64,000 nucleotides of DNA, from positions 401,260 through 465,259 of IMG/VR virus record IMGVR_UViG_3300034072_000926. The stretch is one strand, 5' to 3'. Each line of letters begins with the position of its first letter. Position 1 is the first letter of the stretch. The position numbers were made by a program, and so were the translations under genes. Below the pieces are notes generated by a model that did not search any database, was not told the DNA's origin, and saw only the letters and a program-made list of their open reading frames with translations. Below, piece after piece: positions 47,866 through 58,402 of the stretch.

Positions 47866-49143
47866 TCAGTCCAACTCGCTCAGAAGGAATTTGTTCTCGA
47901 GATAGGGACGAAGCACCTCAGGGATACGTATCTCTCCGCCGTCCTGATAGTTCTCGAGCACCGCCACAAGTGTTCGACCAACAGCTAGACCACTACCGTT
48001 GAGGGTATGTGCGAAGACCGTGTGGCCATCAACCTTGTAGCGGGTATTCATGCGACGTGCTTGGAAATCGCCGCAGTTAGAGACGCTGCTGATCTCTCGA
48101 TACGCTTGCTGACCCGGAAGCCAGACCTCAATATCATAGGTCTTCTGTGCGCTGAAACCCATATCGCCCTTACAGAGCAACATCGTGCGATAAGGAAGAT
48201 CAAGACGAGCAAGGATCTGTTCAGCAGCATTCAGCATATAGTCATGCTCGCTGACACTTTGTTCGGGCTTGCAAATCGAAACCAATTCAACTTTCTGGAA
48301 CTGGTGTTGACGAATCAGCCCACGAGTATCACGACCTGCCGAGCCTGCCTCACTACGGAAGCAATCAGTCAATGCCACATAGCGATGCATCCCTAGCAGG
48401 ATTTCATCAGCATGGATATTGGTCAGGCTGACCTCGGCAGTGGGAATGAGATATTGTTCGGTTGCAAAGGCATCTTCGCTATTGGCAATTCCGAAGAGAT
48501 CATCTTTGAACTTGGGAAGCTGCCCAGTGCCGAATAGTGCTTCCTTGTTGACGATCACTGGAGGGATGACCTCGAGGAAGCCCCGCTCACGATGACTATC
48601 AAGCATGAACTGACCGAGGGCACGATGGAGACGAGCGACTGGACCCATCAACATGCTGAAGCGGGATCCGCTGATCTTCGCAGCACGGTCCATACCGAAT
48701 TGCAGGTCAAGTTCGTAATGAGGAACGGAGTTCTTGGGAAGGATGACGCCCCATTTGCGAACTTCTACATTGCTTGATTCGTTCGAGCCATCGGGAACAT
48801 CATCAGCCGCGATATTGGGACACTGTAGGAGATAGCCGTTGAGAACAAACTCACTGCTATTGGCCTGGTGCTCATATAGCTTGATATCGTCCTTCAGTTT
48901 CGCGATAATCGCTTTTAGCTCATCGACTTTCTCAAGGTCATTAGACTTCATAGCCAGACCAATATCCCCGCTGAGCTTTTTCAGAGCGGACTGCGCCTGC
49001 TGTTGCTTGGAAAGGAAGCCTCGACGATTCTCGTCATATTCGAGAATCTTATCCGTTTTTGGATCATGGCCTCGACTCTTCATAGCGTCAGTGAAGGCCT
49101 GTGGATTGTCCCTGATGGACTTGATATCGAAGTGATAATTCAT
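47866..49143 (-). CDS. serS: serine--tRNA ligase
   Basis: N-terminal coiled coil, LIPTAEV, FRSEAGSAGRDTRGLIRQHQFQKVE, EISSVSNC, TLNGSGLAVGRT. Confidence 0.96.
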   Translation of the reverse strand: MNYHFDIKSIRDNPQAFTDAMKSRGHDPKTDKILEYDENRRGFLSKQQQAQSALKKLSGDIGLAMKSNDLEKVDELKAIIAKLKDDIKLYEHQANSSEFVLNGYLLQCPNIAADDVPDGSNESSNVEVRKWGVILPKNSVPHYELDLQFGMDRAAKISGSRFSMLMGPVARLHRALGQFMLDSHRERGFLEVIPPVIVNKEALFGTGQLPKFKDDLFGIANSEDAFATEQYLIPTAEVSLTNIHADEILLGMHRYVALTDCFRSEAGSAGRDTRGLIRQHQFQKVELVSICKPEQSVSEHDYMLNAAEQILARLDLPYRTMLLCKGDMGFSAQKTYDIEVWLPGQQAYREISSVSNCGDFQARRMNTRYKVDGHTVFAHTLNGSGLAVGRTLVAVLENYQDGGEIRIPEVLRPYLENKFLLSELD

Positions 49144-49240
49144 ACCGCTTCGTAACATTGGTTACACTAGGCGTCAAGACTAGATTGGGTAGTCATGGTG
49201 AAACCCAGTTCGTTTCCGAACCGGGCCTCATGTATTTAGA

Positions 49241-50289
49241 GCAGGCTGAGATTACACCTACAAGCGAGTGTCTTTGGTCATTATCCCCGGCTTTGACACC
49301 GGTTTTCTCCCGTTATCCACTAAGCGTAGCCGAAGCATTCACCTAGTAACACTCAAAACCGCTTCCAATTTATATACCGCTGGCATTTGCGGTGTCCTAG
49401 TGATTTATCGGCAGCCTCTGTTCACGTCAGCCCTCGCAGACTGTTAAGGGGTTGCGGCCCCAACAAGAACTCTTCTACCAACACCTTTGAGGTCCCCCTC
49501 TCCAGTGCCTCTGTTAGCCTTAGCCCAGAGGATTGGGTTTCTTTTCTTCCATCGCTGGAAGTCACTAGCGAGTCAGGCTTTCGATTTTTATGCGTCAAGC
49601 ATAGCAAGTTTGACTGTAAACCCATTGCGATGTGCTGACTCAGTAGCTTCATTGGCTTTTGACCAACAAAATACTACACACCACGTATCTTTCGGCTTGC
49701 GACCTACTTGATGTTCTTTCAGGAATTGTCACAGGATTTGACTCCCATACCAACACCTTCAGAATGCCAATCGCCCTTGGTGCAACCTTCGGACTAATTG
49801 ACTATCTCTTACCACTAAGTAATGACCATATTTCGCTGGGAACGTCGGGTTGCGAAGCCCGTTGGATAGCCGCTCGTCGCCACTACCTTTATACCAACTT
49901 GCGTTGGAACAGTTGTCCTATGGTGTCCTACCTATCTCCACTGACCTGCAAGGCCTTGAAGAACTTCCTTTTGGGAAGTAGGTTGAGACTTGCTTGGTGA
50001 GACGACATTGCTATCGCGGAACCTATTGGGTTTCGGTTCCTTTCCACTAAGTTACCCTAGTGTCACTCTGTTAATGGCCCCAAGCGGCCAAACTTTCTAA
50101 CTCTGTAGTTGACCACTTTAACACCGAAGCGCCTTGTTGTCAACAACTTTGTTTCGATCGTTGCCTCTGCGGCACAACGCCCTACTTCTGATCAACTCTC
50201 ATCGTATCCCGCGGTCGGGAAATCCTTTCGGAAACCCCAGGCCTTGTTCTACTCCTGCTGACCTCTGTAGTGCGTTGCACCGCGTTGGT
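49241..50289 (-). ncRNA. large structured ncRNA, GOLLD-like
   Basis: ~1 kb without a credible ORF after a TTGACG-N17-TATAAC promoter; contains GGCGATTGGCATTCTGAAGGTGTTGGTATGGG and ends AGTGGATAA...GTGTAATCTCAGC, which match GOLLD motifs as I recall them. Confidence 0.65.
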
Positions 50290-50645
50290 CTAGCTGTTAT
50301 ATGCAAATAACCAGAGCGCGTCAACAACAAAAATAGATTATTTTGAAATTATTTTGCCCTGGTGCAAACCATAAGGATGGGCCCCAACAATCCTGAGAAT
50401 TGCTGGGACCCTAAGTAGGAACTGGGGGAGTTCCTACCCCGATGCGCTATTGTGTTTGGCTCACGAAGTCCAACCGACCTTAGGCTTCGGTATCCTGTCA
50501 ACGCTGCAATGCGACCTAGGAAAGCAACTCGCCGATCTAGCAAAACTTTCCAGAGAGCGCTAACAAGGATTAGCGTGTCGTATTACTAGAGCGATAAAAA
50601 TTAAGCAAATGAAAAATTGCGAACTATTTGAATCTTATATTTGAT

Positions 50646-51133
50646 ATGGTTAGGGCCTTAGAAACCTAAGTCTCTAAGGCCCAACCATCGAACCGAAGTT
50701 CTCTGGTTTTTGTCACCCTCGGTTCTTTCGCCTATCCCGAAGGATTAGCCAGGGAGTGCCGGAAGGTAACAAAACTCGGTTTAGGCCAGCTAGTTCAATA
50801 CCCACGAAAGGAAAGTTCTAGCTGGCCAACCAACAAAGACCTAAGTCTCTGTGGTATTCGTGTAGGTTTTCCTATATAGGCCAAAGCCACTAAACAGGAC
50901 CCTTGCACAAATTCGGTTTAGGGACCAGTCAATCCGAAAACTAACTGGTCCCAACCAACAAAGACCTAAGTCTCTGTGGTTTCTGTGCCAGTGATCTACT
51001 GTTGCTATGATCCGACCGAAGTCTTCTCAGGGAGTTCAGCAGTCTTTGCACAAAACTCGGGTTTAGGACAGTTGAGTGTTTATCCGGAGATTACTAACTC
51101 AACTGTCCAACCATCGAACCTAAGTTCTTTGGT
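50646..51133. repeat. array of four structured repeats with constant flanks and covarying stems
   Basis: units at about 50646-50707, 50778-50855, 50915-50980 and 51060-51133: GGTT(T)AGG-stem-loop-stem-CCAACCA plus a CCTAAG/CCGAAG hairpin ending TGGT. Confidence 0.8.
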
Positions 51134-51279
51134 ATCGGAAGGTTCTACGCGATTAACAAATCTAGTTAGCCGAAGCTTCTATTAAGTGTCACATCAGCGT
51201 GTGTGCGCTTCCGATAGCTGTTAAGTATGCGATGCCCGCAGAGTTTGCAAGTGGAGATTGCAAAAATTTTACAAAGACC

Positions 51280-51300
51280 TGTGCATAACTCTGTGGATTA
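51280..51300 (-). promoter_or_regulatory. two adjacent DnaA-box-like 9-mers
   Basis: TTATGCACA (fits TTWTNCACA) and TAATCCACA (one mismatch). Confidence 0.35.
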
Positions 51301-58392: not shown

Positions 58393-58402
58393 ATGGAGAA
58401 GT

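What the first reader, a model, noticed from the sequence alone, without database searches (positions are those of the whole stretch)
50646..51133. Four-unit array of covarying hairpins with constant junctions
Seen: units start about 130-145 nt apart. Each has GGTT(T)AGG, a different perfect 9-12 bp stem (GGGCCTTAGA, GGCCAGCTAG, GGGACCAGT, GGACAGTTGAGT), CCAACCA, and a second hairpin reading UUAG/UUCG-looped on the minus strand. The spacers are themselves closed by TGT(G)/(C)ACA pairing. Sequence varies while pairing is kept, unlike CRISPR repeats or simple iterons. A TTGCAA promoter-like site near 51245 could drive a minus-strand transcript. Inference: a multivalent RNA sponge or antitoxin mimic, a concatemer processed into unit RNAs, an unrecognised ribozyme array, or ssDNA hairpins of an origin. 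I recognise no named family.
Basis: partly seen in the sequence, partly recalled or inferred. Interest (0 to 1): 0.78.

Follow-up and report, generated by a model that had tools for sequence, protein, structure and literature searches.

The report
Modular hairpin RNA beside phage GOLLD
A giant-phage genome carries a gene for a previously undescribed, highly folded non-coding RNA of about 0.6 kb, built from repeated two-hairpin modules and lying just upstream of a GOLLD RNA and a phage seryl-tRNA synthetase; it recurs in at least ten related phage contigs, so it is real, but what it does is still unknown.

Summary
On the minus strand, 51215 to 50641, lies a chain of helices. A leader domain is followed by four modules, each with a short hairpin A and a long hairpin B, separated by closed spacer domains. 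The junctions are constant (RCC, GGUUG, AACC) and the stems covary.

A covariance model built from the units finds 36 units in 10 jumbo-phage contigs, with 2 to 5 units per array. Of the paired cells, 95% are paired against 70% in shuffles, and 20 of 23 pairs show compensatory changes. The same model finds nothing comparable in 761 kb of other phage DNA.

G-U pairs, cUUCGg loops and model scores all point to an RNA read from the minus strand. A promoter-like site is conserved in eight genomes. No Rfam family matches the array.

This order is conserved.

The first spacer holds an invariant internal loop. A variant unit changes all three junction elements together (ACG/CGU/ACG), which suggests two alternative pairings.

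The most likely reading is a stand-alone structured RNA that presents a repeated junction as a multivalent platform. A processed precursor is the main rival. Origin, ribozyme and antitoxin readings are disfavoured.

The parts
51280..51300 (-). Two tandem TTATCCACA-like (DnaA-box-like) boxes upstream of the array promoter. Probably a regulator site.
   Evidence: TAATCCACA and TTATGCACA. The same tandem boxes stand at the same place in the relatives. The number of such boxes in the whole window is not above chance.
51222..51250 (-). Promoter-like site: TTGCAA (51250-51245), a 17-nt spacer, then TACTTA (51227-51222).
   Evidence: The hexamers CTTGCR and (C)RTAnAnA are conserved in 8 genomes while the 17-nt spacer varies, 6-7 nt before the conserved ATCGGAAGCG. 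The generic sigma-70 scan did not call it. Function is inferred.
51134..51215 (-). Leader domain C0, closed by ATCGGAAG/CTTCCGAT. Probable 5' end of the RNA.
   Evidence: Consensus fold of window, L003 and L059. The closing stem stays paired with changes in L059 and L087 (reading).
51053..51133 (-). Unit 4, the first one transcribed. It has hairpin A, GGTTG, a 12-bp hairpin B with a conserved apical internal loop, and TAAACC.
   Evidence: Model R1 gives 105.1 bits and R2 gives 89.4 bits. There is a compensatory change against L003 and L059.
50981..51055 (-). Spacer domain C4, a rod with an invariant asymmetric internal loop (GAACUCCCUG opposite UCAWAGCAAC).
   Evidence: Both loop strands are invariant in 9 genomes while the flanking helices covary, with 9 of 21 pairs showing double changes. 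The domain is present right after the first unit in 9 of 10 arrays.
50908..50980 (-). Unit 3: hairpin A with a TTAG loop, and a 14-bp hairpin B capped by TTCG.
   Evidence: R2 gives 64.4 bits; stem pairs are listed.
50856..50912 (-). Spacer domain C3, closed by ATTTGTG/CACGAAT.
   Evidence: Consensus fold. The same domain type is found at another position in L059, which points to module shuffling (reading).
50771..50855 (-). Unit 2: hairpin A identical to that of unit 3, and a 10-bp hairpin B.
   Evidence: R2 gives 59.9 bits.
50708..50774 (-). Spacer domain C2, closed by a 10-bp stem. It contains a second ACUCCCUG motif.
   Evidence: Consensus fold; reading.
50641..50707 (-). Unit 1, the last one: hairpin A with a TTCG loop, a 13-bp hairpin B, and TAACC.
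   Evidence: R2 gives 60.0 bits. There are compensatory changes against L003.
50355..50480 (-). Separate small structured region between the array and GOLLD. In relatives it holds a solitary variant unit.
   Evidence: A conserved block (GGTCGGTTGGACTTCGTGAGCC) and covarying hairpins occur in window, L003 and L059. R2 scores the relatives at 27.5 bits (L087), 21.9 (L086) and 19 (L003, L091). The window's own copy is not scored as a unit.
50296..50324 (-). Promoter-like site ahead of GOLLD: TTGACG, 17 nt, TATAAC.
   Evidence: It is conserved in L003, L059, L085 and L087, with an A/T-rich stretch upstream. Inferred.
49243..49684 (-). GOLLD RNA, conserved 3' region. The whole RNA probably runs from about 50290.
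   Evidence: RF02032 matches at 149.6 bits with E = 1.8e-41 over the full model 1-416, just under the gathering score of 150. The same RNA scores 118-175 bits in the relatives.
47866..49158 (-). Phage seryl-tRNA synthetase gene, downstream on the same strand.
   Evidence: Pfam PF00587 and PF02403; TIGR00414 at 461.6 bits against a cut-off of 301.65.

Best explanation
The array is the gene for a stand-alone, highly structured non-coding RNA of about 575 nt. It is read from the minus strand, from a promoter at about 51250-51222 to about 50640. It belongs to a lineage of jumbo phages, and the SerRS relatives suggest sphingomonad hosts.

Shown:
- The RNA is a chain of helices: a leader domain C0, then repeats of a variable hairpin A, a variable hairpin B and a closed spacer domain.
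- The stems are kept by compensatory change. Only the junction letters are constant: RCC at the 5' foot of A, GGUUG between A and B, and AACC after B.
- The module number varies from 2 to 5 among relatives.
- The first module and the following spacer C4, with its invariant internal loop, are the conserved head.

Inferred (my estimate is about 0.35-0.4 for this part): the hairpins, mostly capped by inert UUCG loops, are struts. The working parts are the repeated junction and the C4 loop. The RNA would then act as a multivalent platform that binds several copies of one partner, either a protein or an RNA end complementary to GGU or ACC. It may do so within the translation-related island formed by GOLLD, aminoacyl-tRNA synthetase genes and tRNA genes.

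The central GGU can pair with either ACC copy, closing A or extending B. In the variant unit all three elements changed together. Each module is therefore probably a two-state toggle that exposes one ACC, or the GGU when a partner is bound.
For: Structure and covariation:
- 36 units in 10 contigs have 95.3% of cells paired against 69.8% in shuffles and at most 51% in slid controls. There are 190 double-change cells, and 20 of 23 pairs are compensatory.
- For the first 10 bp of B, 120 of 120 cells are paired, whereas non-cognate arms pair at 51%.

Strand:
- The fold is -245 kcal/mol (z = -11.9) on the minus strand against -210 (z = -7.5) on the plus strand.
- cUUCGg occurs 4, 5 and 8 times on the array strand and 0 times opposite.
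- The model scores 85-105 bits on the array strand against 19-22 bits opposite.
- There are many G-U cells, for example 11 of 36 at one pair.
- It is the same strand as GOLLD, SerRS and all 10 tRNAs.

Not coding: there is no ORF under the standard code or under TAG or TGA recoding.

Own gene:
- The promoter-like hexamers are conserved with a variable spacer in 8 genomes.
- L088 has GOLLD without the array.
- L094 has the array without GOLLD.
- L090 has an ORF between the two.
- The upstream gene differs between genomes.

Repeated functional unit: the copy number is 2, 3, 3, 4 (in six arrays, one of them cut by a contig end) and 5.

Toggle:
- The base of A and the extension of B have comparable predicted probabilities.
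- The solitary variant unit has ACG/CGU/ACG in place of ACC/GGU/ACC.

C4 loop: it is invariant in 9 genomes while the neighbouring helices covary.
Against: - No partner is known.
- Transcription, strand and RNA ends are not shown directly. Pieces of the array stand in RNA libraries. A neighbouring coding stretch is found in as many RNA runs, the contigs carry no direction, and DNA carry-over cannot be excluded.
- In known sponge RNAs the binding motifs sit in loops, whereas here the loops are not conserved.
- A variable unit number fits a processed precursor equally well.
- The three-element change rests on one old paralogue, that is, on one or two evolutionary events.
- Three of 36 units lack a good 3' AACC.
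Confidence: 0.45

Rival explanations
1. Polycistronic precursor. The transcript is cut at the constant junctions by host RNase E or RNase P, or by a phage enzyme. This would release unit-sized RNAs, either the A+B hairpin pairs or the closed spacer domains, which would end in a tRNA-like stem followed by RCCA.
For: - The modules are tandem with constant junctions and a variable copy number of 2-5.
- In 10 of 12 cases the closing stem of a spacer is followed directly by R-CCA, like an acceptor end (reading).
- The linker GAG/UUUU resembles an RNase E site. This is my own knowledge and was not tested.
- Several tRNA genes of the phage encode CCA.
Against: - ARAGORN and Rfam see no tRNA-like fold.
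- The spacer domains are not equivalent: C4 is unique and the others are shuffled.
- The RCC is also explained as the foot of hairpin A.
- No preferred molecule ends were seen, although only low-depth contigs were available.
Confidence: 0.25
2. A 5' extension or cis-acting leader of one long transcript that also carries GOLLD and the synthetase gene(s).
For: - All lie on the same strand, and the order array-GOLLD-aaRS holds in 9 of 10 contigs.
- No intrinsic terminator is predicted on the minus strand between the array and SerRS.
Against: - Conserved promoter-like sites lie between the array and GOLLD.
- The array and GOLLD occur without each other (L094, L088), and an ORF separates them in L090.
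- About 1.5 kb separates the array from the first codon.
- There is no T-box or other leader family match.
Confidence: 0.12
3. A DNA-level element, such as ssDNA hairpins of a replication origin, a priming signal or recombination sites.
For: - Two conserved DnaA-box-like repeats lie just upstream.
- Perfect stems could also form in single-stranded DNA.
Against: - G-U pairs and cUUCGg loops occur on one strand only.
- Model scores are strongly strand-specific.
- Cumulative GC skew runs on without a turn through 50-52 kb.
- The box count in the window is at chance level.
- The order of the GTT... and ...AAC elements is the reverse of integron attC sites, and there are no cassettes.
Confidence: 0.04
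4. An RNA decoy or antitoxin mimic against a host defence, in the manner of pseudo-ToxI repeats or RNA anti-CRISPRs.
For: It is a tandem structured RNA in a phage, and multivalency would suit titration of a host factor.
Against: - The units are 125-156 nt long and differ in sequence, unlike 34-45-nt near-identical antitoxin repeats.
- PADLOC finds no toxin or defence gene among the neighbours.
- There is no CRISPR-like repeat.
Confidence: 0.04
5. An array of self-cleaving ribozymes of an unrecognised class.
For: Only the general picture supports this: repeated structured units in a phage.
Against: - No ribozyme family matches at E up to 10.
- The constant letters are short and mostly base-paired, with no conserved unpaired core in the units.
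Confidence: 0.03

Closest known systems
GOLLD and ROOL RNAs (large ornate phage RNAs)
   Same: It is a large, heavily paired phage RNA of unknown function, found in tRNA and translation-gene islands. Its stems covary around short conserved unpaired stretches. Here it lies physically next to a GOLLD gene.
   Different: It has no sequence or model similarity to either. It is built from a variable number of tandem modules rather than one fixed multi-pseudoknot fold. It occurs with and without GOLLD.
CsrB/RsmZ-type protein-sponge RNAs
   Same: They are many hairpins in a row presenting one short motif several times, and the copy number varies between relatives.
   Different: In those RNAs the motif (GGA) sits in the loops. 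Here the loops are UUCG-type caps and are not conserved, and the constant letters lie at helix junctions.
CcsR / 'cuckoo' tandem small RNAs of Alphaproteobacteria
   Same: They form tandem arrays of about four homologous units of two hairpins each, in the same bacterial class as the likely hosts.
   Different: Their units are about half as long, carry C-rich anti-Shine-Dalgarno loops and have no spacer domains. None of these holds here. This comparison rests on my recollection of that family.
ToxI-type (type III) antitoxin repeats
   Same: They are tandem RNA repeats that fold and act in multiple copies, and phages can carry mimics.
   Different: ToxI-type repeats are near-identical, 34-45 nt long, and directly precede a toxin gene. 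Here the units are 125-156 nt, they diverge, and no toxin gene is nearby.
T-box discriminator and RNase P L15 loop (UGGN / GGU pairing with tRNA NCCA)
   Same: An invariant (U)GGU faces an RCCA, and the element lies among synthetase and tRNA genes.
   Different: Here both strands are in the same RNA. There is no Stem I, specifier or terminator, and no model match. The variant unit with CGU could not bind CCA. This is a lead only.
CRISPR arrays and integron attC arrays
   Same: Constant short elements alternate with variable stretches at a regular spacing.
   Different: The variable stretches are self-complementary hairpins kept by covariation, and the constant parts are only 4-17 nt. There are no cas or integrase genes and no cassettes.

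Membership tests
GOLLD (Rfam RF02032) | Match of the covariance model over the element | tested here: not met
   The only GOLLD match is at 49243-49684, about 1 kb downstream. Nothing matches in 50600-51250 at E up to 10.
Any Rfam 15 family (including ROOL, T-box, tmRNA, Y RNA and the ribozymes) | cmscan match at a permissive threshold | tested here: not met
   Only chance microRNA or snoRNA hits with E of 1.5 or more appear, on the window array and on the L059 array.
tRNA / tRNA-like RNA | Cloverleaf recognised by ARAGORN or RF00005 | tested here: not met
   Ten tRNAs are found elsewhere in the window and none in the array.
tRNA / tRNA-like RNA | Acceptor-type stem followed by R-CCA | tested here: inconclusive
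   Ten of 12 spacer stems are followed directly by RCCA (reading). The same letters also form the foot of hairpin A.
CRISPR array | Near-identical direct repeats of 23-50 nt separated by unique spacers | tested here: not met
   Only short junction motifs repeat, and the variable parts are hairpins.
Type III toxin-antitoxin (ToxI-like) | Near-identical tandem repeats of about 34-45 nt | tested here: not met
   The units are 125-156 nt apart, and the sequences between paralogues are largely different.
Type III toxin-antitoxin (ToxI-like) | Toxin endoribonuclease gene directly downstream | tested here: not met
   PADLOC finds no ToxN-, Abi- or other toxin model among the neighbouring ORFs searched. 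None of the neighbours with a Pfam hit is a toxin; they are a synthetase, a glycosyltransferase, an HTH/sigma-like protein and a GIY-YIG endonuclease.
CsrB/RsmZ-type sponge | GGA motif in most hairpin loops | tested here: not met
   The loops are mostly UUCG or UUAG, and GGA is not conserved among orthologous loops.
T-box leader | Stem I with specifier, T-box sequence, terminator/antiterminator | tested here: not met
   There is no RF00230 match and no terminator after the units.
T-box leader | UGGN element that binds the free NCCA end of tRNA | not testable with these tools
   An invariant (U)GGU exists, but binding of tRNA needs an experiment.
Integron attC array | RYYYAAC ... GTTRRRY in that order, cassette ORFs, integrase | tested here: not met
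   The order is reversed on both strands (reading). There are no ORFs between units, and no integrase was found among the neighbours searched.
Replication origin | Turn of cumulative GC skew | tested here: not met
   The skew falls steadily across the whole window.
Replication origin | Cluster of initiator boxes | tested here: inconclusive
   Two conserved DnaA-box-like repeats lie at 51280-51300. The window-wide count is at chance level.
Self-cleaving ribozyme | Cleavage activity | not testable with these tools
   No known ribozyme model matches. Activity of a new class would need a bench test.

The most novel reading that the evidence does not exclude
Each module is a docking toggle for the free 3' end of tRNA. 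The invariant (U)GGU between the two hairpins would normally be masked by one of two internal ACC copies. It could be captured by the NCCA end of an uncharged tRNA, as in T-box discriminators and the RNase P L15 loop. The RNA would then tether several tRNAs at once and work together with the neighbouring GOLLD cage RNA and the phage's own synthetases and tRNAs. That would give the first functional handle on what GOLLD-type islands do. The evidence does not exclude this. The variant unit with CGU, which cannot pair with CCA, and the lack of any tRNA-body recognition element speak against it.
Probability: 0.08. Interest if true: 0.9.

Novelty: new variant of a known kind. Interest (0 to 1): 0.62.

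Why it matters
Large structured phage RNAs such as GOLLD and ROOL have recently been shown to form RNA-only cages, yet their function is unknown.

This is a second conserved and strongly covarying RNA gene. It lies next to GOLLD in a lineage of jumbo phages that also carry their own synthetases and tRNAs. Its architecture is unusual: a variable number of two-hairpin modules with a three-element junction that appears to toggle, plus one invariant internal loop.

It therefore offers a new RNA family for structural work and a possible partner or context clue for GOLLD. It also offers a simple model for how modular RNAs grow by duplicating units. If the junction binds a defined partner, the RNA would be a natural multivalent scaffold.

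Tried and rejected
- **Coding reading.** There is no ORF under the standard code or under TAG- or TGA-sense codes.
- **Rfam at gathering and at E up to 10.** Nothing matches the array.
- **First pattern scan of viral contigs.** Three of the five loci (L002, L004, L005) were chance hits in coding DNA.
- **C4-motif scans.** The metagenome-contig scan and the first genome-contig scan used the C4 motif. They gave only chance hits (L062, L063) or nothing.
- **Unit-junction scan.** The second genome-contig scan used a unit-junction pattern and gave one chance hit, L084.
- **51 other GOLLD loci and 17 more distant SerRS-carrying phage loci.** These contain no units by descriptor or by covariance model. 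The repeats seen there are a different, promoter-like motif or tRNA genes.
- **GenBank phages.** Only the first hairpin of GOLLD matches, in Phosso, DSS3_MAL1 and MD18.
- **MAFFT alignment of paralogous units.** It was unusable because the stems vary. A model built from unit-4 orthologues and iterated replaced it.
- **Alternative pairing in which the 3' strand of one spacer pairs with the 5' strand of the next, giving a cloverleaf-like closure.** This is rejected, because C0, C2 and the L059 spacer have stem sequences that fit only their own partner.
- **Trans targets in the window for the junction or for the C4 loop.** None is above chance.
- **RNA-seq support.** It is inconclusive after a control stretch.
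- **My first impression that the array is better conserved than its flanks.** This was wrong. Identity to L003 is 75% overall, like the genome, and only C4 reaches 97%.

Full report
**What is there.** The window comes from a 465-kb viral contig, since L001 is identical to it. It carries ten tRNA genes, all on the minus strand, a seryl-tRNA synthetase gene at 47866-49158 and homing-endonuclease genes. From about 49160 to 51300 there is no credible ORF, even if TAG or TGA is read as sense. The finding covers the upper quarter of this gap.

Read on the minus strand, the stretch from 51215 to 50641 is a chain of helices.
- It starts with a leader domain closed by ATCGGAAG/CTTCCGAT.
- Four modules follow, at 51133, 50980, 50855 and 50707.
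- Each module starts with RCC(A), then a short hairpin A with a UUAG or UUCG loop, then (U)GGUUG.
- Next comes a long hairpin B of 10-14 uninterrupted pairs with a different sequence in each module. A one- or two-letter bulge and AACC follow.
- Between modules lie spacer domains, each closed by its own stem.
- The module spacing is 156, 125 and 145 nt.
- The minus strand folds to -245 kcal/mol (z = -11.9) and the plus strand to -210 (z = -7.5).

**Relatives.**
- Pattern scans and searches with the neighbouring SerRS gene first gave two related jumbo-phage contigs with the same array, L003 and L059.
- A covariance model built from the unit-4 orthologues recovered all twelve units and nothing else significant in the window, apart from weaker opposite-strand echoes of the same sites.
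- The model rebuilt from the twelve units found no further unit in 761 kb. That stretch included 51 other GOLLD-bearing viral loci and 17 more distant SerRS-bearing phage loci.
- A protein search with SerRS, followed by look-ups of the contigs that encode its closest phage-type relatives, then gave seven more arrays.
- In all, 36 units in ten contigs were aligned.
- Arrays have 2 units (L085), 3 (L089, L090), 4 (window, L003, L059, L086, L087 and probably the cut L094) or 5 (L091). Four is therefore not a fixed number.

**Covariation.**
- On the 36-unit alignment, 95.3% of cells form standard pairs, against 69.8% when partners are shuffled and at most 51% when they are slid.
- Twenty of 23 pairs show changes on both sides, in 190 cells.
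- The alignment was fitted to the model, which favours the structure. The independent count on the raw sequences agrees: 120 of 120 cells are paired in the first ten pairs of B, against 51% for non-cognate arms.

**It is RNA, from the minus strand.** Five points agree.
- The better fold is on that strand.
- cUUCGg caps occur 4, 5 and 8 times in three arrays, against none on the other strand.
- There are many G-U cells, which would be A-C mismatches on the other strand.
- The model scores 85-105 bits on that strand against 19-22 bits for the opposite strand of the same sites.
- The orientation is shared with GOLLD, SerRS and the tRNAs.

A promoter-like pair of hexamers (CTTGCR, 17 variable letters, (C)RTAnAnA) is conserved in eight genomes, 6-7 nt before the conserved start ATCGGAAGCG. 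The generic sigma-70 scan does not call it, so its function is inferred.

Direct evidence of transcription is weak. Exact pieces of the array stand in several RNA libraries. A control coding stretch is found in as many, the contigs have no direction, and the runs were selected with the array itself.

- At a permissive threshold, Rfam finds GOLLD at 49243-49684 on the same strand. The score is 149.6 bits, a hair under the gathering score of 150, which is why the default scan was silent.
- GOLLD follows the array in nine of ten contigs, and synthetase genes follow GOLLD.
- The array is nevertheless its own module. Conserved promoter-like sites lie between it and GOLLD.
- L088 has GOLLD but no array, L094 has the array but no GOLLD, and L090 has an ORF between them.
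- The gene upstream of the array differs between genomes.
- According to the paper read, GOLLD forms a 14-mer cage, is often near tRNA islands, and has no known function.

**Anatomy that bears on function.**
- Loops are mostly UUCG-type caps and are not conserved between orthologues. Stems change freely. The hairpins therefore look like struts.
- The constant letters are RCC, GGUUG, the first G-C pair of B, and AACC (33 of 36 units).
- The central GGU can pair with the 5' ACC, which closes A, or with the 3' ACC, which extends B. The thermodynamic model gives both comparable weight, varying from unit to unit.
- A solitary variant unit downstream of the array, in L087, L086, L059 and L091, has ACG, CGU and ACG at the three places. 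All three elements changed together there, which is what one expects if both pairings are selected. This rests on one old paralogue and is suggestive only.
- The spacer after the first unit (C4) has two invariant loop strands, GAACUCCCUG and UCAWAGCAAC, in nine genomes while its helices covary. It is present in nine of ten arrays and is the best candidate for a specific binding or docking site.
- The spacer stems pair locally. An alternative cloverleaf-like closure across modules is excluded, because C0, C2 and one L059 spacer have stem sequences that fit only their own partner.
- Spacer types sit at different positions in L059 than in the window, so modules have been shuffled or duplicated.

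**Most likely mechanism.** I read it as a stand-alone structured RNA whose repeated junction is presented two to five times, with a conserved head formed by the leader, the first unit and C4. It would be a multivalent platform for a still unknown partner, with each junction able to switch between two pairings. That it is a real, conserved, minus-strand structured RNA gene I hold at about 0.9. The platform mechanism I hold at about 0.35-0.4.

**Rivals.**
- The main rival is a precursor that is cut at the junctions (0.25). It is supported by the variable copy number and by the stem-plus-RCCA look of the spacer ends. It is weakened by the non-equivalence of the spacers and the absence of any tRNA-like fold.
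- A leader or extension of the GOLLD-synthetase transcript (0.12) is weakened by the independent presence and absence of the two elements and by the internal promoters.
- DNA-level readings (0.04) are contradicted by the strand asymmetries and the flat GC-skew trend. Two conserved DnaA-box-like repeats do lie just upstream.
- The antitoxin or decoy reading (0.04) has little support.
- The ribozyme reading (0.03) also has little support.

**Comparison with known systems.** The array is not a member of GOLLD, ROOL, tRNA, T-box, CRISPR, ToxI, CsrB-type or attC families. In each case a defining feature was tested and not met (see the membership table). In kind it is closest to the large ornate phage RNAs of tRNA islands. 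In logic it is closest to multi-hairpin platform RNAs. The GGU facing RCCA recalls the way T-box leaders and RNase P hold the tRNA 3' end. That is a lead from memory, not a test.

**Novelty and limits.** No Rfam family, no GenBank phage and no paper found covers it. All members are metagenomic contigs and no isolate is known. The closest cellular relatives of the phage SerRS are from Sphingomonadaceae at 54-55% identity, which suggests the host group. Function, ends and strand of the RNA still need experiments.

Noticed in passing
window 49243-49684 (-), probably up to about 50290: A GOLLD RNA scores 149.6 bits, just under Rfam's gathering score of 150, so default annotation misses it. It lies directly upstream of the phage SerRS gene. 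In relatives the same RNA scores 118-175 bits.
   Followed up: yes
window 50355-50480 (-); L087 3241-3311, L086 1946-2015, L091 3052-3123, L003 7681-7749: A further small structured region lies between the array and GOLLD. It has a conserved block and covarying hairpins. In relatives it scores as a solitary variant unit, with ACG/CGU/ACG in place of ACC/GGU/ACC.
   Followed up: partly
window 51280-51300 (-); the same place in L003, L059, L085-L087, L089, L091: Two tandem TTATCCACA-like (DnaA-box-like) repeats lie upstream of the array promoter and are conserved in eight genomes. A single TTGTCCACA box also precedes a downstream promoter in L059 and L087. This may be a host DnaA site or a phage regulator site.
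   Followed up: partly
window 50115-50143 and 50296-50324 (-): Several promoter-like sites share an extended TTGTTGAC -35 element. They lie within the 2.1-kb non-coding stretch and are conserved in relatives. The stretch may therefore hold a cluster of separately transcribed RNA genes.
   Followed up: partly
window 40312-40388 (-): A tRNA with anticodon CUA, which ARAGORN calls tRNA-Pyl, would be an amber suppressor and has an encoded CCA end. ORF lengths give no sign that TAG in particular is recoded: reading TAG, TGA or TAA as sense lengthens ORFs about equally.
   Followed up: partly
window 47866-49158 (-) and relatives L085, L086, L088, L090, L092: The closest cellular relatives of the phage SerRS are Sphingobium, Novosphingobium and Sphingomonas at 54-55% identity, which hints at the host group. 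Relatives carry a second synthetase gene beside it, class I in L085, L086, L088 and L090, and class II in L092.
   Followed up: partly
L060/L081 7732-8068; L092 168-364; L087 9794-9879, L088 9696-9784, L093 6740-6824: More distant or related jumbo-phage contigs carry other RNA genes nearby: an alphaproteobacterial two-piece tmRNA gene, a group I intron-like element (47.3 bits against a cut-off of 50), and tRNA-Sec-like sequences just below Rfam's cut-off.
   Followed up: no
L009, L010, L016, L017, L024, L035, L037, L046, L054, L055 (other GOLLD-bearing viral contigs): A roughly 20-nt motif (TTGTTTTACAAAGATAAGTA and variants) repeats three to five times at 90-230-nt spacing near GOLLD. It looks like a phage promoter repeated in a tRNA or small-RNA cluster and is unrelated to the array studied here.
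   Followed up: no
window, 5' flanks of the ten tRNA genes (for example 40389-40391, 58393-58395): Nine of the ten tRNA genes are preceded directly by AT, mostly as CAT or TAT, which may be a shared processing or leader signal. Only some of the genes encode the CCA end.
   Followed up: no
public runs X1-X42: Near-identical phage sequence stands in many unrelated public runs, including soil, subsurface, indoor, wastewater and sediment samples and runs labelled with several single organisms. The phage or its host is therefore widespread and perhaps a frequent companion of cultures.
   Followed up: no
L090 697-2058; L093 902-1336: In two relatives a T5orf172/MUG113-type (GIY-YIG-like) ORF is inserted into the RNA-synthetase island. 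In L090 it lies between the array and GOLLD, and in L093 between GOLLD and SerRS. The island therefore seems to be a landing site for mobile endonuclease genes.
   Followed up: no
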